Sequence record: LR756501.1
DNA length: 64,000 bases
Direction: 5' to 3' (one strand)
A program made the translations under genes and the position numbers. Position 1 is the first letter of the stretch, and each line of letters opens with the position of its first letter. A model generated the notes under the pieces. That model was not told where the DNA came from. It made no database searches and saw nothing but the letters and a program-made list of their open reading frames with translations. Positions 22,855-50,103 of the stretch are shown here, piece after piece.

Positions 22855-23619
22855 ATGGTAAACGAAAACGCTACTTTAATCTTATCAAAAGAATATCAAG
22901 ATAAGATGACTGATATACTAAATAGATATTTTTACGGTAAAATTGGTATAGAAATAGGTGGACCAAGTATGAGATATTTTAGTAATCCAAAAATGCACAT
23001 ATACGGCGATCAACTATGGCATATACCAGATGGAAAATCTGTGGCAAGATTAGATGGTGTAAATTTTGCTTCTTCAACAGTTTGGACAGGTAAAATAGAT
23101 ACTGAAAAAGGTTTTGTCGTAGAAGGTAAAAGATTAGGAAATCAATACATACTTGACGCTACTGACCTTTCATCTATAAAGGAAAAATATGATTTTGTAT
23201 TGTCTTGTAACAATATAGAACATATAGCAAATCCACTTAAAGCTGTAGAACAATGGTTATCAATTTTAAATGAAGGCGGAGCACTTGTAGTCATTGCACC
23301 TAATAAAGAATCTAATTTCGATCACAAAAGGGAAATTGTAAAATTCGAACATCTGATGGATGATTTTAAAAATGATATAAAAGAAGACGACCTATCACAT
23401 TTGGATGAAATATTAACTTTACACGACATGCAATTACACCCAGTTGAAAATTTTAGAGAAAGAAGTTTAAATAATTTCGAAAACAGGTGTCTTCATCAAC
23501 ACTGTTTCGATTTAAACATTTTAAAAAAAATATATGAAATGTTTGATCTAACAGTTATTTTCACTGCTGATATAGGATTAGATTTTATTATTATAGGCGT
23601 AAAAAAACCCACTCATTGA
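22855..23619 (+). CDS. class I SAM methyltransferase
   Basis: GIEIGGPS, YDFVLSCNNIEHIANPLKA, GGALVVIAP. Confidence 0.8.
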   Translation: MVNENATLILSKEYQDKMTDILNRYFYGKIGIEIGGPSMRYFSNPKMHIYGDQLWHIPDGKSVARLDGVNFASSTVWTGKIDTEKGFVVEGKRLGNQYILDATDLSSIKEKYDFVLSCNNIEHIANPLKAVEQWLSILNEGGALVVIAPNKESNFDHKREIVKFEHLMDDFKNDIKEDDLSHLDEILTLHDMQLHPVENFRERSLNNFENRCLHQHCFDLNILKKIYEMFDLTVIFTADIGLDFIIIGVKKPTH

Positions 23620-23630
23620 GTGGGTTTTTT
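23601..23630. terminator. bidirectional intrinsic terminator between convergent genes
   Basis: AAAAAAACCCACTCA-T-TGAGTGGGTTTTTT. Confidence 0.85.
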
Positions 23631-23686
23631 ATTTGATCAGGGAAACGTGGGATATTCTTCACCTAGGCTCGCGAGACCGTTCACCT

Positions 23687-23735
23687 TTTCAGGCTACACG
23701 TATTTGATCATTATATAGTAACTGCTGTGTATCTC
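23687..23735 (-). ncRNA. ACAGCA-stem element overlapping the DUF2828 stop codon
   Basis: AGATAC-ACAGCAG...GTGTAGCCTGAAA; TACAC/GTGTA pairing; degenerate member of the family. Confidence 0.5.
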
Positions 23736-25171
23736 TCACCGTCAATGACTTTCATCATCAATTCGTAAGGAGTTTCTTTCTTAGGTTCGACCTTTACTTC
23801 ATCTTGAATTTCTTCTCCCTGAAGAATAGCCTTCAAACCACTTGGGCTGAAACCCGATACAAGACCAACATTTTCGTCAAATGCTGATGCTGTTACTTTG
23901 TCCTCTGCTGCTCTAAGGTTCCAGAAGATGATTCTTGGAATCTTATATCCAGCTGCAGCGTAATGAGCTTTCATCATTTCGTAGGCGTTTGCGTTGTAGC
24001 AAGCTTTCGAAGGATCAAACTGCATATCTGATAAGATCAAGATTACTGTTGGCATTTCTGCTTCAGAAATTTTGTTCTCAATTGCTTTGTTAAGCAATAG
24101 TTCAAACGCTGCTTCAAGGTTTGTAGTCCCCTTCCATTCTACTCCTCTGATAGCACGAATCCTTTCGGCGATGCTACCTTGTAAGTACATCATCTTTGGA
24201 TGAGTATGGAAAGTCATGAAAGCGTCCTTGAAAATGCTTTCGTTTCTTTCAGAAATATAAAGACCAAGTGACCAACCCGCTCTCGCTGGTAATCCGCCAT
24301 AGAATTCCATAGAACCCGATGTATCAACCATTGGAAGCAACCTTTCGGTTGATCCTTCCATGTAGTTTGGCAACGAGTACCATTGTGCTTCAATAGCTAA
24401 ATTATCAAATTCTGTCCTAGCTCTTAGGAAAGCGTCGTAAAGTTGGTATGGGTAGATAGCGCTTGCGCACATCTTAGCAACACCACTCTTTACATTTGCG
24501 ATGTATTCTGCGAACCTCCCAGAATCTTTCTTGTAGAAAGCTTTTCTGTACTTGTTCATAGCTACAGAAGGAACGTGTTCGTAGTTAATGCCTTCAAATT
24601 GCTTTGCGCACATTAACTGCTCAACAGTCTGTGATAGCGATACTATCATCTTTCTGTAATCCTTTGGTGTTAAACCAAGAGCCTTACGAACGGTGTTCGC
24701 AACACTTCCCTTTCTTGGCAACCATTTTCCAAGCAGACCGTCTTTACTCTCTAAACCTTGTGCAATCAAAGGCATGTAAATGTCTTTGTTGAGGTGGAAC
24801 AAGTCGTCCCATCTTCCGTATTCTGGAATAAGGTTGATATTCTTTTTCAAATATCCGAGGTAATACTTTTCAAGATAGCTTAAACATACCCTGAAGAACT
24901 TACGTTCTCCAGCTCCACCACGTACGTCTCTCGTCCAGAACATAAGTTTAAGAGCGGTCAAAGGGTCTTCAGCCAAAGCTTTTTGGAACAATCCTTCAAT
25001 TTGGGCGTCTGTCCAATGACGGGCAGCACCTGCCATGAAATACATATCAACGCAAGCGTTTAAGCTGGTTGTGTTGGTTGGCATACCTTTCTCTGTGAAG
25101 GTATCATTTTGTCTTGCGCCATTTACTAATCTTGATGGTGATCCTGCTGGTTTTGTGATTCTGTTTGCCAT
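23711..25171 (-). CDS. DUF2828 family protein (TROVE/Ro60-like helical domain plus vWA)
   Basis: RDVRGGAGERK, EYGRWDDL, GKWLPR, VPSVAM, MIDAS VDTSGSM, LSDMQFD, IIFWNLR, VSGFSP. Confidence 0.9.
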   Translation of the reverse strand: MANRITKPAGSPSRLVNGARQNDTFTEKGMPTNTTSLNACVDMYFMAGAARHWTDAQIEGLFQKALAEDPLTALKLMFWTRDVRGGAGERKFFRVCLSYLEKYYLGYLKKNINLIPEYGRWDDLFHLNKDIYMPLIAQGLESKDGLLGKWLPRKGSVANTVRKALGLTPKDYRKMIVSLSQTVEQLMCAKQFEGINYEHVPSVAMNKYRKAFYKKDSGRFAEYIANVKSGVAKMCASAIYPYQLYDAFLRARTEFDNLAIEAQWYSLPNYMEGSTERLLPMVDTSGSMEFYGGLPARAGWSLGLYISERNESIFKDAFMTFHTHPKMMYLQGSIAERIRAIRGVEWKGTTNLEAAFELLLNKAIENKISEAEMPTVILILSDMQFDPSKACYNANAYEMMKAHYAAAGYKIPRIIFWNLRAAEDKVTASAFDENVGLVSGFSPSGLKAILQGEEIQDEVKVEPKKETPYELMMKVIDGERYTAVTI

Positions 25172-44529: not shown

Positions 44530-44683
44530 TAAACTGCTGTTCCCTAATCTTATATTGAAGTCCTTTCATTTCACTAAGAACTTCTTCCAAATAGTCGAAA
44601 TCCATCGCGTAATGATCACCGATGAATTTCATTTGGAATATCACTTCCTTGCATAAAGCCTCATACCTGTCAAATATATCCAT
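44489..44683 (-). CDS. hypothetical protein
   Basis: 64-aa ORF. Confidence 0.45.
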   Translation of the reverse strand: MDIFDRYEALCKEVIFQMKFIGDHYAMDFDYLEEVLSEMKGLQYKIREQQFIEYNENKERISRS

Positions 44684-45497
44684 AATTTATGTAATTTAGA
44701 AATTTTTGTATTTCTTTTTCTAAATATTCTTTATTCACTTCATTTATTGGATTCTTCCATTTTATCCTATAAACCTTTATTCCAACATCTTCTAACAATT
44801 TATCCCTCACTATGTCCTTTTCTTTTCTATCTTTGTAAGAGTGTTGTTTACCATCAATTTCCAAATCAATTTTCTTATCCTCGAAATAAAAGTCTAAAAA
44901 ATAATTACTTATATCATTTAATCCCAAATCCCTTTTACTTATTACAAAGTTTTGTTTGTATTCCAATTTGTTATTTTTCAATACTTCAATGAAAAACTTT
45001 TCTGGGTATGATATTATATTCCTACTTGTCCAACCTTTATGTGTTCCGTTTCTGACTTTTTCTTTAACATTCAAACTTAGATTTTTTTTCATTCCTAATT
45101 TTGAACAAATATCACTACAATATTCTTGTTGTGATAATTTTCCATTTTCAATTCTTGTAACTATAAAAACATCGCCACACTCTTTACAATTTCTTTTATA
45201 TTCTTTAAGTGCTTTTTTGCCTCCTCTATCTATTCTTTTTAAACTTAAACTTGTTTTTGATTTTTGTTCATCAGTGATTATTCTATTTTTATTATTATAA
45301 GAAGCCGAACAAGAACTAGAACAAAATTTATTTTTTCTTTTATCGTAAGGCAATGAATTATTACAATTCAAACATAAATTGGGGTTATTATTATATTTTT
45401 CAACCCTTTTGTTTTTAATTTCTTGTATTTTTCTATTACCCAATACAGAAGCTTTTTTAGCATTTTCTATATGATATTCAGATCCAATATAATTCAT
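44670..45497 (-). CDS. freestanding endonuclease, DUF559/Vsr-like PD-(D/E)XK with Cys-rich zinc modules (putative homing endonuclease)
   Basis: CLNC...FCSSSC, CKEC...YCSDIC; SYPEK, YFLDF, IDLEIDGKQH, RD..L...G.KV.RI.W. Confidence 0.8.
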   Translation of the reverse strand: MNYIGSEYHIENAKKASVLGNRKIQEIKNKRVEKYNNNPNLCLNCNNSLPYDKRKNKFCSSSCSASYNNKNRIITDEQKSKTSLSLKRIDRGGKKALKEYKRNCKECGDVFIVTRIENGKLSQQEYCSDICSKLGMKKNLSLNVKEKVRNGTHKGWTSRNIISYPEKFFIEVLKNNKLEYKQNFVISKRDLGLNDISNYFLDFYFEDKKIDLEIDGKQHSYKDRKEKDIVRDKLLEDVGIKVYRIKWKNPINEVNKEYLEKEIQKFLNYINYGYI

Positions 45498-47327: not shown

Positions 47328-47404
47328 ATAGTCCTGCGTGTTACCATTAATCACTACCGACCCCTGAGGGGCCAGGTGGGGATCGAACCCACATCTCAGG
47401 ATTT
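47328..47404 (-). ncRNA. circularly permuted tRNA (3' half before 5' half, break in anticodon loop)
   Basis: AAA-TCCTG-AGAT-GTGGG-TTCGATC-CCCAC-CTGGCCCC-TCA-GGGGTCGG-TA-GTG-ATTAATGGTAA-CAC-G-CAGGA-CTAT. Confidence 0.75.
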
Positions 47405-47479
47405 TGGTGGAAAGAATGAGATTCGAAATCATACCGCCCCAGCATCCACCGGGGTCTTCTAACATTAAACTACCTTCCC
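47405..47479 (-). ncRNA. tRNA-like RNA with non-canonical anticodon loop
   Basis: GGGAAGG/TCTTTCC-A-CCA, CCCCGG-TGGATG-CTGGGG arm. Confidence 0.55.
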
Positions 47480-48355
47480 ATATAAATTCTTCAACTCTAA
47501 TATATCGATGAACTTATTTACTGTTTCTTTATAATATTTACCATGTCTTTCATCGAAATCTTCGATTCTTTTTTCTAATTCTTCTAAGGTTATTGAACAA
47601 TCATCACATTTACTTTGATTATTCCTATTTACAATCAATTCACAATTTGCGGGATGAGCTAATAATAATGGGCTTATTAATCTTCGAAATCCCTCTCTTA
47701 CTGAAAACATGTGATCTCTACTAACACCATTTACATTATTTCCTCTGTTTTTTGCGCTATACCACCCATATTTTTCAACTAATTTAAAATCAAATTCATA
47801 ATCCTTTAATGAAAACTTAAATCCTGATAAATCATGATACATTTTATAATCTGACATATTTTTTAAATAATATTCTTTCTTACATTTTGCATTACAATAT
47901 GTTCTATTTCTAAATTTATATTCTAATATTTCATTACAATTTAAACATTTATTAGGGTTATCATAATATATTGATTTCTCTTTTAAATATAAGTCTTTTT
48001 TATCAAATAAGAAATTCTTATAGGCTGAATCAATTAAAGCATTTCTACCTTCATCAGTTAAATTGTATTTTGTTCCTTTTCTTTTTTTGTTATTAATAAT
48101 AGCTGAGCATTTATGACTACAAAAATTACCATTGTCTTGTATTTTATCGTATGGTATAATACTTTCACAATTTTTACAAATCTTTGGACTAGATAAATAT
48201 ATTACTTCATTCTCATATCTTTTTTGTTTGAATGTTTCTTTTACCTTATCATAATTTCTAATATATTTATTAACATAAATATTTCTACATTTCAATGAAC
48301 AATAAATATTTTTACCATTGGTTTCATTTTCACATTCAAGATTTTTACACTTCAT
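47465..48355 (-). CDS. HNH-like endonuclease with Cys-rich zinc modules (putative homing endonuclease)
   Basis: Three CxxC...(Y/F)CxxxC repeats; SRDHMFSV...HPANCELI...N..K. Confidence 0.75.
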   Translation of the reverse strand: MKCKNLECENETNGKNIYCSLKCRNIYVNKYIRNYDKVKETFKQKRYENEVIYLSSPKICKNCESIIPYDKIQDNGNFCSHKCSAIINNKKRKGTKYNLTDEGRNALIDSAYKNFLFDKKDLYLKEKSIYYDNPNKCLNCNEILEYKFRNRTYCNAKCKKEYYLKNMSDYKMYHDLSGFKFSLKDYEFDFKLVEKYGWYSAKNRGNNVNGVSRDHMFSVREGFRRLISPLLLAHPANCELIVNRNNQSKCDDCSITLEELEKRIEDFDERHGKYYKETVNKFIDILELKNLYGKVV

Positions 48356-49304: not shown

Positions 49305-49306
49305 TG

Positions 49307-49417
49307 AGCCTGCAGTAGGACTTGAACCTACCTTTCTAATCCTTAAAAAACCTCACATCGTGCCTAGGACTTCAGAACCGGTTTAAGATTAGATTTGTCT
49401 GCCACTCGACCTCAGGC
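49307..49417 (-). ncRNA. tRNA-like RNA with greatly extended anticodon hairpin
   Basis: GCCTG/CAGGC acceptor, GTC/GAC D-arm, TCTAATC/GATTAGA enclosing about 45 nt, GTAGG-TTCAAGT-CCTAC. Confidence 0.65.
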
Positions 49418-49422
49418 ATTTG

Positions 49423-49524
49423 TGGACTTGATGAGAATTGAACTCACTTGGGATGCCTCCCTTTTCCTAACCCTGCTCGGACCCCACCGATCAATGCTTT
49501 CGACAACATTACACAAACAAGCCC
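49423..49524 (-). ncRNA. tRNA-like RNA with Ala identity (G3:U70, A73) and no canonical anticodon loop
   Basis: GGGCTTG/CAAGTCC-A, TCGG-TGGGGT-CCGA, GGGA-GGCA-TCCC, normal T-arm. Confidence 0.55.
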
Positions 49525-49533
49525 ATTTTATTG

Positions 49534-49605
49534 TGACCCCAACAGAAATCGAATCTGTATTGTATGTTTAGGAAACATATTTCCTATCCGTTGGAAGATG
49601 GGGCC
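49534..49605 (-). tRNA. tRNA-Arg(CCT)
   Basis: Full cloverleaf, TATGT-TT-CCT-AA-ACATA. Confidence 0.9.
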
Positions 49606-49609
49606 GTAT

Positions 49610-49704
49610 GATATGGCAAGAGACCTTTACTCTGCTTCCCTGGGCAAGCCTTTCGAGCTGCCCCGGGTGGGATTCGAACCCAAATTTAACGATATTGCCA
49701 TATC
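49610..49704 (-). ncRNA. YrlA/Y-RNA-like permuted tRNA mimic
   Basis: 10-bp closing stem GATATGGCAA/TTGCCATATC enclosing T-arm TGGG-TTCGAAT-CCCA, loop-closed acceptor-like stem, D-like hairpin. Confidence 0.65.
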
Positions 49705-49708
49705 TTTG

Positions 49709-49777
49709 TGGATCTTCGGGATTTGAACCCGCCCTTTTGTTTGCGAGACAAACGTGCCTCCCTTACACTTTAGACCC
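49709..49777 (-). tRNA. tRNA-Ala(CGC), slightly degenerate
   Basis: G3:U70, TTTGT-CT-CGC-AA-ACAAA. Confidence 0.75.
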
Positions 49778-49845: not shown

Positions 49846-50010
49846 TGGAGTAAGTGGGATTCGAACCCACACCGCTGAAGACTAGTAACTCGCTTCCCTT
49901 GCTCATTCTTTTTTCACCACCTCAACATAAGGTCGCTATAGGTGCATCCGCAATTCGTCATTCAATCAGGTTATCGTTGCCTGTACAGACCGCCACTCTG
50001 TTGTTACCCC
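49846..50010 (-). ncRNA. 165-nt Ala-acceptor RNA, possible mini-tmRNA
   Basis: GGGGTAA/TTACTCC-A (G3:U70), T-arm GTGGG-TTCGAAT-CCCAC, about 130-nt insert containing GGC AAC GAT AAC CTG ATT GAA TGA. Confidence 0.5.
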
Positions 50011-50016
50011 AATTTG

Positions 50017-50103
50017 TCTAAGTGAGAGGACTCGAACCTCCAGAGTTATATTAACACTCGCTTCCAAGGCGAGATCGCTATCCAATTACGGGCTTACACC
50101 TAG
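50017..50103 (-). tRNA. tRNA-Pro(TGG) with long variable arm
   Basis: CTAGGTG/CACTTAG-A (C1-G72, A73), CTCGC-CT-TGG-AA-GCGAG, GTTA-ATA-TAAC arm. Confidence 0.82.

What the first reader, a model, noticed from the sequence alone, without database searches (positions are those of the whole stretch)
49610..49704. YrlA-type Y RNA candidate inside the tRNA array
Seen: a perfect 10-bp terminal stem encloses, in order, a T-arm with TTCGAAT loop, a GC-rich acceptor-like stem closed by a loop (GGGCAG...CTTGCCC) and a D-like hairpin. Established: this T, closed-acceptor, D order is the YrlA architecture. Inference: it is a second class of ligand for the DUF2828/Ro60-like protein. The terminal stem lacks the canonical Ro-binding signature as far as I can see, consistent with a divergent partner.
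Basis: partly seen in the sequence, partly recalled or inferred. Interest (0 to 1): 0.7.

Follow-up and report, generated by a model that had tools for sequence, protein, structure and literature searches.

The report
Rearranged tRNA-like RNA in phage tRNA operon
The flagged 95-base stretch is a real, tRNA-derived RNA fold with its parts in "permuted" order, sitting like a cassette between two tRNA genes of a 735-kb phage. It does not pass the tests for the known YrlA family, and better YrlA-like candidates lie a few kilobases away.

Summary
The structure is real. On the minus strand, 49704→49610 folds into a 9-10 bp closing stem, a 13-nt linker, a T arm, a capped acceptor-like hairpin and a D-like hairpin (z = -3.6; 0 of 3000 flank shuffles reproduce it). 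It lies 4 nt from a tRNA on each side, in the tRNA operon of uncultured huge phage LR756501.

The topology is YrlA-like, but membership is not supported. There is no Rfam YrlA hit even in a 123-nt search. The GNCGAA motif is absent. The Ro-like gene is 24.4 kb away. The element scores only 15.5 bits against a model of phage YrlA-like modules, which is the level of ordinary tRNA-tRNA junctions.

It occurs intact only here. One sister lineage has a weakened T stem, another lacks the D arm and closing strand, and two lack it altogether.

The DUF2828 protein does have a Ro60 fold. Its genes in 13 loci are flanked by RNAs with a different signature (stem-ACAGCAA…stem-CUG), which this element lacks.

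A second element at 47332-47401 is a much better YrlA-type module: YrlA is its top Rfam family, and it has independent, covarying homologues.

Best reading: a lineage-restricted, tRNA-derived mimic with an unproven partner. Debris from homing-endonuclease turnover is the main rival.

The parts
49696..49704 (-). E1 closing stem, 5' strand GAUAUGGCA (a 10th pair with A49695 is possible). It is also half of a local palindrome, GAUAU-GGCA-AUAUC.
   Evidence: MFE fold. The 24 nt from the spacer bases (AAA) through the stem and the start of the linker match L263 at 96% (23/24), and the segment is likewise conserved in L129/L115/L260.
49683..49695 (-). E1 13-nt unpaired 'variable-region' linker AUAUCGUUAAAUU
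   Evidence: It carries 2 of the 4 differences from the sister lineage.
49668..49682 (-). E1 T arm UGGG-UUCGAAU-CCCA (4 bp, 7-nt T loop, G53:C61 equivalent)
   Evidence: The 24 nt UGGGUUCGAAUCCCACCCGGGGCA are identical to the genuine 3' end (T arm + acceptor 3' strand + A73) of ordinary phage tRNA-Leu/Lys genes.
49638..49667 (-). E1 capped acceptor-like hairpin (AS): CCC.GGGCA.GCU-CGAAA-GGC.U.UGCCC.A.GGG. In tRNA numbering this is acceptor strand 66-72 + A73, a 13-nt cap, then G1-G7.
   Evidence: Pairing, including the G.A mismatch, is kept through changes on both strands in L263: GGC.G.GGGGUG ... CACCCC.A.GCC.
49634..49637 (-). E1 4-nt linker AAGC (tRNA and YrlA-like modules have 2 nt, UA/UG)
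49619..49633 (-). E1 D-like hairpin AGAG-UAAAGGU-CUCU. GG is in the loop, but there is no A14/A21 equivalent.
   Evidence: No counterpart in L263, where the sequence runs into an HNH-endonuclease remnant.
49610..49618 (-). E1 closing stem, 3' strand UGCCAUAUC
   Evidence: Identical in L129/L115/L260. In L263 there is only a 7-bp partial partner, UUGUCAU, inside the HNH remnant.
49709..49777 (-). Upstream neighbour, tRNA-Ala(CGC) with G3:U70. Its 3' processing would set the 5' end of E1.
   Evidence: Rfam tRNA 39.3 bits. 4-nt spacer CAAA.
49533..49605 (-). Downstream neighbour, tRNA-Arg(CCU). RNase P cleavage at its 5' end would set the 3' end of E1.
   Evidence: ARAGORN and Rfam. 4-nt spacer AUAC.
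47332..47401 (-). E2, a second and better permuted tRNA-like module: UCCUG | AGAU | GUGGG-UUCGAUC-CCCAC | CUGGCCC-CUCAG-GGGUCGG | UA | GUG-AUUAAUGGUAA-CAC | G | CAGGA
   Evidence: Its top Rfam family is YrlA: 16.8 bits, E 0.17, model positions 28-81. It scores 77 bits with model R1. Homologues not used for training: L257 x4, L265, L266.
23711..25171 (-). DUF2828 + DUF7788 (vWA) protein, 486 aa, Ro60-like fold
   Evidence: Pfam; AlphaFold2 and Foldseek

Best explanation
E1 (49704->49610, minus strand) is a tRNA-derived, circularly permuted tRNA-like RNA gene that is restricted to one small phage lineage.

Its T arm and acceptor stem are those of an ordinary tRNA. The acceptor ends (A73 and G1) are joined by a 13-nt cap, and the anticodon arm is replaced by a 9-10 bp helix formed by the RNA's own ends.

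Inferred mechanism: E1 is transcribed as part of the tRNA operon. It is released as a species of about 95-103 nt when RNase P and the 3'-processing enzymes cut the two flanking tRNAs, 4 nt away on each side. It folds into a tRNA-shaped body that can neither be charged (no free CCA end) nor decode (no anticodon). Any activity it has must therefore come from being bound by a protein that recognises tRNA shape. That is the logic of the YrlA tRNA-like domain.

E1 resembles YrlA in how it would work, but it is not a demonstrable member of the YrlA family or of the phage E2-type module family. It carries neither the Ro60 motif nor the signature of the DUF2828-linked RNAs. The DUF2828 Ro-like protein is thus one possible partner, not the indicated one. 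Its patchy conservation suggests an accessory, young or decaying element rather than a core part of the system.
For: SHOWN:
- The fold and its non-randomness.
- Same strand as the tRNAs and 4-nt spacing to both neighbours.
- No promoter-like or terminator-like site next to it on the minus strand. A strong terminator (50360-50333) lies just upstream of the array.
- The T arm plus acceptor 3' strand are identical over 24 nt to real phage tRNA 3' ends whose 5' ends are GCCCUGG/GCCCCAG. E1 has GCCCAGG.
- The AS helix is kept between the window and L263 through coordinated changes on both strands, with the G.A mismatch retained.
- T-stem pairing differs as 3 bp in L263 (AGG/CCU), 2 bp in L129/L115/L260 (AGG/CCC) and 4 bp in the window (UGGG/CCCA). 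The window's four clustered changes at 49681-49689 restore pairs opposite an unchanged 3' strand.
- The architecture class is real and recurrent in this phage clade and elsewhere: the E2-type modules.

INFERRED: co-transcription, excision by flanking tRNA processing, the L-shaped fold, and protein binding.
Against: - No expression data exist.
- Only three lineages carry any part of E1, and only the window has it with all four helices intact.
- L257 and L264 lack it at the syntenic place.
- In L263 the D arm and closing strand are replaced by an HNH-endonuclease remnant.
- Local divergence between the window and L129 is so low (0 differences over 158 nt, 49680-49523) that the identity of the closing stem, D arm and AS there says nothing about selection.
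- The D-like hairpin lacks the U8/A14/A21 equivalents and has a 4-nt linker, so a tRNA-like elbow is not assured.
- E1 gets no significant score from either the YrlA model or the E2 model.
Confidence: 0.45

Rival explanations
1. One reading: E1 is a bona fide YrlA-type Y RNA, a second class of ligand of the phage's DUF2828/Ro60-like protein. The closing stem tethers the protein and the tRNA-like body acts as the effector domain.
For: - The V-T-AS-D topology is correct.
- The DUF2828 protein has a Ro60 fold.
- DUF2828 genes sit beside YrlA-like RNAs and tRNA arrays in other phages.
- A phage Ro60 has been shown to bind phage-encoded Y-like RNAs (PMC12135203).
- The Rfam YrlA model also misses the Felixounavirus module, so its silence is not decisive.
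Against: - No YrlA hit at E<=10 in 123 nt, whereas E2 in the same window does get YrlA as its top family.
- No GNCGAA motif.
- E1 is 24.4 kb from the gene.
- It lacks the stem-ACAGCAA...CUG signature found 1-4 times beside every one of the 13 DUF2828 genes, including this one at 25225-25193.
- It scores 15.5 bits against the phage module model, equal to the tRNA-junction background.
- It is not conserved in relatives that keep the tRNA array; whether those phages carry a DUF2828 gene could not be checked on the fragments held.
Confidence: 0.2
2. E1 is non-functional debris. It would be a tRNA 3' half (T arm + acceptor strand) left behind by homing-endonuclease insertion and deletion cycles in the array, whose remaining sequence happens to fold back. 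The 'D arm' and closing strand would not be homologous to tRNA parts.
For: - The array is full of endonuclease-type ORFs (DUF559 at 44670-45497; the Zn-ribbon ORF at 47465-48355) and of degenerate tRNA-like pieces.
- In L257 a 227-aa ORF, and in L263 its C-terminal remnant (..LLCPNCHSLTSTYGGSNRGKGRSS..), occupies the place of E1's 3' third.
- E1's closing strand UUGCCAUAUCAU resembles UUGUCAU-UCAU inside that remnant.
- E1 is absent in two lineages and has a weakened T stem in a third.
Against: - A perfect 9-10 bp closing stem plus an 11-pair capped AS is not expected from decay: 0 of 3000 shuffles.
- AS pairing and T-stem pairing are maintained or restored through changes on both strands across lineages.
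- The exact 4-nt spacing to both tRNAs is that of a cassette.
- The similarity to the HNH remnant is short (10 of 12 with one gap) and could be chance.
Confidence: 0.25
3. E1 is a permuted, split-tRNA-like precursor. RNase P cuts 5' of G1 in the AS cap and the 3' side is trimmed to A73 and given CCA, as happens to M. smegmatis YrlA. The product would be a two-piece, anticodon-less molecule with a chargeable acceptor end.
For: - The AS contains a complete 7-bp acceptor stem (GCCCAGG/CCGGGGC, one mismatch) plus A73, stacked on a T arm. This is the minimal RNase P substrate shape.
- M. smegmatis YrlA has a 7-bp AS and is cleaved by RNase P and CCA-tailed (PMC4201824).
Against: - The cap forms its own 3-bp stem, leaving no single-stranded leader.
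- There is no anticodon loop and no BHB-type motif at the termini.
- In L263 the cap is a 37-nt insert of unrelated sequence.
- No data on processing exist.
Confidence: 0.07

Closest known systems
YrlA (Rfam RF02553), the tRNA-mimicking bacterial/phage Y RNA bound by Ro60/Rsr (Chen et al. 2014, PMC4201824)
   Same: - The order is 5' stem, variable region, T arm, capped acceptor-like stem-loop, D arm, 3' stem.
- It has a UUCGAAU-type T loop and GG in the D loop.
- It has no anticodon and no free acceptor end.
- It occurs in a genome that encodes a Ro60-fold protein.
   Different: - No covariance-model match.
- No GNCGAAN0-1G motif.
- 24.4 kb from the Ro-like gene instead of 4 kb or less.
- That gene is DUF2828, not a TROVE-family orthologue.
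- 4-nt rather than 2-nt linker before the D arm.
- The D loop lacks A14/A21 equivalents.
- The T stem has 4 bp.
- The AS is 30 nt long with a G.A mismatch.
- It is embedded as a cassette in a tRNA operon.
E2-type free-standing or embedded tRNA-like modules of phages, defined here (window 47332-47401; L129, L257 x4, L265, L266, L008, L140; Felixounavirus HY02; Mycobacterium phage JoeDirt)
   Same: Same topology, same strand and same cassette-like placement in the same tRNA array. One member (L257:8938-9022) also has a long AS.
   Different: - E2-type modules share UAGU..AAUGGUA..AC D arms, a 4-nt variable region, a 5-bp T stem and a 5-6 bp closing stem, and score 29-77 bits with model R1.
- E1 scores 15.5 bits and shares only the T loop.
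Yrl1/Yrl2 of Thermus phage phiLo, bound by its Ro60 (PMC12135203)
   Same: Phage-encoded structured RNAs proposed or shown to partner a phage Ro60-fold protein.
   Different: They lie directly upstream of the Ro60 gene and carry a CGAA motif in a stem-bulge-stem. No tRNA-like domain is described for them.
Circularly permuted tRNA genes of the red alga Cyanidioschyzon merolae (from my own knowledge; not tested here)
   Same: The 3' half (T arm, acceptor 3' strand) lies upstream of the 5' half (acceptor 5' strand, D arm), with the acceptor ends joined by an intervening sequence.
   Different: Those genes regenerate a complete anticodon arm after circularisation at a bulge-helix-bulge motif. E1 has no anticodon-loop nucleotides and no such motif.

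Membership tests
YrlA (RF02553) | Order V - T arm - capped acceptor-like stem-loop - D arm, enclosed by pairing of the 5' and 3' ends | tested here: met
   MFE fold; descriptor search; order of the family from PMC4201824 and from the Rfam structure line
YrlA (RF02553) | Match to the Rfam covariance model (gathering score 69 bits) | tested here: not met
   No hit at E<=10 in 1.1 kb, E<=1 in 31 kb or E<=10 in 123 nt. Controls: JoeDirt 39.8 bits full length; E2 16.8 bits as top family. The model also misses the Felixounavirus module, so it is not fully sensitive.
YrlA (RF02553) | GNCGAAN0-1G motif near the 5' end (presumed Ro60 contact) | tested here: not met
   The 5' 26 nt are GAUAUGGCAAUAUCGUUAAAUUUGGG, with no match. 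The only CGAA is in the AS cap, preceded by CU.
YrlA (RF02553) | Encoded within about 4 kb of, and on the same strand as, the Ro60 orthologue | tested here: not met
   Same strand, but 24,439 nt separate 49610 from 25171.
YrlA (RF02553) | tRNA-type invariant nucleotides allowing tertiary pairs (T54-A58, G53:C61, G18/G19 with the T loop, U8:A14, A21, Levitt pair) | tested here: inconclusive
   The T loop UUCGAAU, G:C closing pair, D-loop GG and a possible A15:U48 are present. There is no U8/A14/A21 equivalent, the linker is 4 nt, and position 49:65 is U.C (reading).
YrlA (RF02553) | T and D arms are the most conserved parts among relatives | tested here: not met
   The T-stem 5' strand is the only variable part between the window and L129. 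The D arm is absent in L263. The element is absent in L257 and L264.
YrlA (RF02553) | Bound by Ro60/Rsr in vivo | not testable with these tools
   Needs pull-down or gel shift.
   E1 scores 15.5 bits. tRNA-tRNA junctions and partial tRNA-like pieces score about 12-41 bits. Members not used in training score 29-54 bits, and E2 scores 77.
   E1 has AUGGCAAU inside its stem, and its 3' end is ...AUAUC-AUAC. Window hits are elsewhere: 46810-46725, 46717-46662, 46115-46050, 27303-27251, 25225-25193.
Canonical tRNA | Cloverleaf with an anticodon arm and a free acceptor end; detected by ARAGORN or Rfam tRNA | tested here: not met
   Not called. Only a 12.1-bit partial match to the T arm plus acceptor 3' strand.
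Circularly permuted tRNA gene | 3' half upstream of the 5' half, with the acceptor ends joined by an intervening sequence | tested here: met
   ...CCGGGGC-A73-[GCUCGAAAGGCUU]-G1CCCAGG...
Circularly permuted tRNA gene | Termini that regenerate an anticodon stem-loop (bulge-helix-bulge or equivalent) | tested here: not met
   The termini form a blunt 9-10 bp helix with 4-nt tails shared with the neighbouring tRNAs. There is no anticodon-loop sequence.

The most novel reading that the evidence does not exclude
DUF2828 proteins may define a second, phage-wide Ro-like ribonucleoprotein system with its own RNA signature (stem-ACAGCAA...stem-CUG). Its tRNA-like effector modules would be either embedded in those RNAs (Felixounavirus, mycobacteriophage cluster L) or, in huge phages, dispersed as free-standing cassettes inside the tRNA operon. 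E1 would then be a free-standing member with a long acceptor cap that binds through its tRNA-shaped body. It might be opened by RNase P to expose a chargeable acceptor end.
Probability: 0.15. Interest if true: 0.75.

Novelty: new variant of a known kind. Interest (0 to 1): 0.5.

Why it matters
If E1 is functional, it shows that phage tRNA operons carry non-decoding tRNA mimics as cassettes that borrow the host's tRNA-processing enzymes for their own maturation.

The follow-up is more useful than E1 itself. It turned up a testable system:
- a Ro60-fold protein family (over 7000 database relatives; 709 phage genome records);
- a conserved companion-RNA signature beside every gene copy examined;
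- a family of YrlA-like tRNA-shaped modules.

Together these make the unresolved question of what the tRNA-like domain of Y RNAs does approachable in laboratory phages such as Felix O1-like coliphages and Mycobacterium smegmatis phages.

Tried and rejected
- Exact or degenerate DNA patterns from E1. The T arm plus acceptor strand hit 114 ordinary tRNAs. Longer E1-specific patterns hit only L115.
- The single metagenome scan returned L129 plus an unrelated termite-gut element.
- The 16-mer of the 5' stem, scanned in viral and GTDB genomes, gave only chance hits with no T arm nearby.
- The search for related loci with the array-internal Zn-ribbon protein in IMG/VR found nothing.
- My structural descriptor and model R1 both pick up junctions between adjacent tRNAs. 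This is the known YrlA false positive named in PMC4201824. L058, L047, L032, L022, L063, L050 and the L151/L195 pair were rejected on that ground after checking ARAGORN calls and encoded CCA ends.
- Sequence-level PDB searches with the DUF2828 protein or a 7-sequence profile were not significant (TROVE proteins at E 0.12). Only the fold comparison was decisive.
- MAFFT alignments of the modules were structurally off by one in the AS, so an N-padded hand alignment was used.
- I considered E1 as an intron-containing or long-variable-arm tRNA, or as part of a larger tRNA with its neighbours. I rejected this because both neighbours are complete tRNAs.
- I considered a Bacteroidota-type promoter (TAnnTTTG) in the linker. 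I rejected it because the motif is absent in the sister lineage.

Full report
SOURCE AND SETTING

The window is identical to positions ~317-381 kb of LR756501.1/LR756503.1, an uncultured 735,411-bp phage. All tRNA genes of the window lie on the minus strand between 42.3 and 50.3 kb. ARAGORN finds 16 and Rfam adds 4 weaker ones. A strong terminator-like hairpin (50360-50333, minus strand) ends the upstream gene just before the array. No promoter-like or terminator-like site lies next to the candidate on that strand.

THE OBSERVATION

Read on the minus strand, 49704->49610 is:
GAUAUGGCA(A) | AUAUCGUUAAAUU | UGGG-UUCGAAU-CCCA | CCC.GGGCAGCU-CGAAA-GGC.UGCCC.GGG | AAGC | AGAG-UAAAGGU-CUCU | UGCCAUAUC.

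RNAfold returns exactly this structure: -36 kcal/mol, z = -3.6. I held the T arm fixed and shuffled the flanks 3000 times. Thirty-two shuffles met a loose descriptor, three had a closing stem of 7 bp or more, and none reached a closing stem of 9 bp together with an acceptor-like hairpin of 10 bp. The element lies 4 nt from tRNA-Ala(CGC) upstream and 4 nt from tRNA-Arg(CCU) downstream.

Three qualifications apply. The 10th closing pair competes with the 4th D-stem pair. The T stem has 4 pairs. GAUAU-GGCA-AUAUC at the 5' end can form a rival local hairpin.

WHAT IT IS MADE OF

The 24 nt UGGGUUCGAAUCCCACCCGGGGCA are identical to the true 3' ends (T arm, acceptor strand, A73, then CCA) of ordinary phage tRNA-Leu and tRNA-Lys genes. 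Those genes have 5' ends GCCCUGG, GCCCCAG or GCCUCGG. E1 continues, after a 13-nt cap, with GCCCAGG. The T arm and 'closed acceptor' are therefore a genuine tRNA acceptor/T domain whose two ends have been joined. The anticodon arm is replaced by the closing helix. This is a circular permutation of a tRNA body, which is also how the YrlA tRNA-like domain is built (PMC4201824).

IS IT YrlA?

Rfam holds the family (RF02553, 114 positions, gathering score 69 bits).
- Positive control: in Mycobacterium phage JoeDirt a full-length YrlA match (39.8 bits, E 2e-5) lies 125 nt downstream of the DUF2828-type 'Ro-like RNA binding protein' gene.
- E1 gives no YrlA match at E<=10 in 1.1 kb, at E<=1 in 31 kb, or at E<=10 in 123 nt. 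Its best hit is a 12-bit partial tRNA.
- The GNCGAAN0-1G motif is absent.
- The Ro-like gene is 24.4 kb away, on the same strand.

A caveat: the Rfam model also misses the Felixounavirus module described below, so its silence alone is not decisive.

A BETTER CANDIDATE NEXT DOOR

Folding the gaps of the array revealed a second permuted element, E2, at 47401->47332:
UCCUG | AGAU | GUGGG-UUCGAUC-CCCAC | CUGGCCC-CUCAG-GGGUCGG | UA | GUG-AUUAAUGGUAA-CAC | G | CAGGA.
It also sits 4-6 nt from its tRNA neighbours.

Evidence for E2:
- In a 91-nt search its top Rfam family is YrlA (16.8 bits, E 0.17), aligned to model positions 28-81, the T-AS-D module.
- The sister phage (L129/L260) has a 69%-identical copy with changes on both sides of pairs in all four helices. 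That copy has moved relative to the neighbouring tRNA.
- The same architecture is the core of the JoeDirt YrlA. It also occurs in IMG/VR contigs L008 and L140, and in Escherichia phage HY02 (Felixounavirus) about 0.9 kb downstream of its DUF2828 gene, inside its tRNA array.
- A hand-made alignment of six modules shows 96.7% of cells paired and 16 of 21 pairs with double changes, against about 50% paired when partners are slid. Several of these sequences were found with stem filters, so the count is partly circular.
- Model R1 built from that alignment then found members it had not seen: four in L257 (41-54 bits, one with a 16-nt AS insert), one in L265 (48 bits) and one in L266 (29 bits).

E1 scores 15.5 bits with R1. 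That is the level of junctions between ordinary adjacent tRNAs, which are the family's known false positives. E1 is therefore not a recognisable member of this module family either.

THE PROTEIN AND ITS USUAL RNAs

ORF 23711-25171 (minus strand) matches Pfam DUF2828 and DUF7788/vWA. It has over 7000 database relatives and occurs in 709 phage records. Sequence searches of the PDB are not significant. An AlphaFold2 model, however, is confident (pLDDT 90.7, pTM 0.90). Its seven best Foldseek PDB matches are all full-length Ro60/TROVE structures: 9kop, 2i91 (TM 0.60), 1yvr, 9l5y (Thermus phage phiLo Ro60) and 9nfa, with E from 1e-7 to 8e-6. 'Ro60-like' is supported at the level of fold.

Reading the flanks of DUF2828 genes in other phages showed a recurrent RNA signature. 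A 7-10 bp 5' strand, often beginning AGR, is followed within 1-3 nt by CAGCAA, usually as ACAGCAA. The complementary strand lies 30-200 nt downstream and is usually followed by CUG.

A scan found 37 such sites in 33.3 kb of same-strand flanks of 13 DUF2828 genes. That is 1.11 per kb, at least one at every gene and usually 2-4 in tandem. Over all sequence held the rate was 0.084 per kb, and in shuffled sequence 0.031 per kb. Some of these RNAs enclose tRNA-like modules (HY02, JoeDirt, L106, L140).

In the window the signature occurs 22 nt upstream of the DUF2828 start codon (25225-25193) and at 27303-27251. It also occurs three times inside the tRNA array: 46810-46725 (which holds a T-arm-like hairpin), 46717-46662 and 46115-46050. 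E1 does not have it: the 5' side reads AUGGCAAU inside the stem, and the 3' end is ...AUAUC-AUAC.

By association, the ACAGCAA-stem RNAs are the indicated partners of the protein. E1 is not indicated. It is not excluded either, since nothing is known of how the protein recognises RNA.

CONSERVATION OF E1

Relatives were reached through DNA patterns and neighbouring proteins.
- L115, L129 and L260 come from three samples and represent one lineage. Their E1 is identical to the window's except at 49681-49689, where UUAAAUUUGGG becomes UAAAAUAAGG. That leaves only two G:C pairs in the T stem.
- Around E1 the two genomes are almost identical, with 0 differences over 158 nt. Identity of the other helices is therefore uninformative. 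By contrast, tRNA-Arg(UCG) and tRNA-Arg(ACG) 500 nt away differ at 9 positions each, and in tRNA-Arg(ACG) the anticodon and T stems show compensatory changes.
- L263 is a more distant relative. It keeps the 5' strand and linker (23 of 24 nt matched) and a T arm AGG-UUCGAAU-CCU (3 pairs). It keeps the AS as GGC.G.GGGGUG...CACCCC.A.GCC, in which both strands are changed, pairing and the G.A mismatch are kept, and there is a 37-nt apical insert. After AAGAAGAG it runs into the C-terminal remnant of an HNH-type endonuclease ORF. It has no D arm and only a 7-bp partial partner for the closing strand.
- L257 and L264 have the array but no E1. L257 has the full 227-aa ORF at that place.

Taking L263 as the outgroup (inference from protein identities), the 5' strand AAGG is ancestral. 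The window's four clustered changes then restore pairing opposite the CCCA strand. That speaks for some selection on the T stem, or for gene conversion from a tRNA.

Overall the T arm plus capped acceptor helix is the maintained core. The D-like hairpin and closing stem are seen in only two close lineages.

MECHANISM

Shown: the fold, its tRNA origin, its strand, its spacing and its patchy distribution.

Inferred: E1 is co-transcribed with the tRNAs and freed by RNase P and 3' processing of its neighbours. It forms a tRNA-shaped RNA that cannot be charged or decode, so it can act only as a ligand or decoy for a protein that recognises tRNA shape. That protein could be the Ro-like protein, a host tRNA enzyme, or a tRNA-targeting defence factor.

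I put 0.45 on a functional or recently functional mimic with an unidentified partner.

NOVELTY

Phage Ro60 proteins with Y-like RNAs are known (PMC4201824; PMC12135203). So is the idea that jumbo phages carry ROT/TROVE proteins with a tRNA-like partner (PMC7824862). E1 is a new variant of that kind at most.

I found no paper on DUF2828-linked RNAs: five unrelated hits for 'DUF2828' and none for 'Ro-like'/phage/Y RNA. The ACAGCAA signature gets no significant Rfam match. Its best hit is a sub-threshold match to a Dictyostelium family (37.1 bits against a gathering score of 41.5), which I take to be fortuitous. That part may be new and deserves its own follow-up.

Noticed in passing
window 47332-47401 (-): E2 is a compact permuted tRNA-like module (5-bp closing stem, 4-nt V, 5-bp T stem, 7-8 bp capped acceptor, UA, D arm). 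Its top Rfam family is YrlA. Covarying homologues occur in L129/L260, L257 (four copies, three in tandem between two tRNA-Ala genes), L265, L266, L008 and L140, in Felixounavirus HY02 and in Mycobacterium phage JoeDirt.
   Followed up: yes
window (-) 46810-46725, 46717-46662, 46115-46050, 27303-27251, 25225-25193; also L135-L138, L106, L151, L155, L184, L195, L212, L224, L173: A family of stem-loop RNAs: a 5' stem strand, then (N)ACAGCAA, then the 3' stem strand followed by CUG. One to four copies lie beside every DUF2828 gene examined (1.11 per kb against 0.084 per kb overall), and three lie in this tRNA array. There is no significant Rfam match; the best is a sub-threshold hit to 'Dicty_Class_I_RNA' (37.1 bits) that looks fortuitous. 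These are likely the cognate RNAs of the Ro-like DUF2828 protein.
   Followed up: partly
window 23635-23710 (-), then terminator 23604-23632: Between the DUF2828 stop codon and a strong intrinsic terminator lies a ~75-nt stretch closed by UGAUCA...UGAUCA. The 115-nt stretch folded, terminator included, gave z = -4.1. Its function is unknown.
   Followed up: no
window 49846-50007 (-), 50017-50103 (-), 49420-49524 (-), 49305-49414 (-): Four oversized tRNA-like genes that ARAGORN does not call. One is ~160 nt with acceptor GGGGUAA/UUACUCC plus a T arm. One is 87 nt with a UGG anticodon loop and a long variable arm. One is 105 nt with a weak tmRNA-type hit. One is 110 nt. At least the first three match relatives (L129, L257). 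They may be intron-containing or otherwise unusual tRNAs.
   Followed up: no
window 47408-47479 (-): A class-I-shaped tRNA with anticodon loop GUGGAUG (GGA, a Ser codon reader, without the long variable arm of tRNA-Ser). ARAGORN calls its L265 homologue tRNA-Ser(gga). It travels with E2 in relatives.
   Followed up: no
window 44670-45497 (-), 47465-48355 (-); L257:6120-6803; L263:3895-4075: Endonuclease-type ORFs (DUF559, Zn-ribbon/HNH-like) and their remnants are interspersed in the tRNA array and differ between relatives. They probably drive the array's rearrangements. The 296-aa Zn-ribbon protein has 465 database relatives, some on contigs up to 711 kb long.
   Followed up: partly
L137 (Listeria phage LMTA-148) 3466-4017: A ROOL RNA match (90 bits, just under the gathering score) lies ~1 kb upstream of the DUF2828 gene. 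Three ACAGCAA-stem RNAs, tRNAs, and RtcB and RNA-ligase genes are nearby, forming an RNA-repair neighbourhood.
   Followed up: no
L106:9697-9791: An ACAGCAA-stem RNA whose interior is a tRNA body in the other permutation (D arm, anticodon arm, T arm, with the acceptor stem replaced by the signature stem). It recalls the orientation described for Deinococcus Yrn1.
   Followed up: no
L116-L134 (termite-gut metagenome contigs): A conserved ~45-nt sequence ending GUUGUCAAGUAAAGGUCUCUGCGAC follows a tRNA 3' end on more than a dozen contigs. It is unrelated to E1 and may be an integration-site or element boundary.
   Followed up: no
window 49448-49726 (+): A 92-aa TTG-start ORF on the opposite strand overlaps E1 and two tRNA genes. 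It is almost certainly spurious.
   Followed up: no
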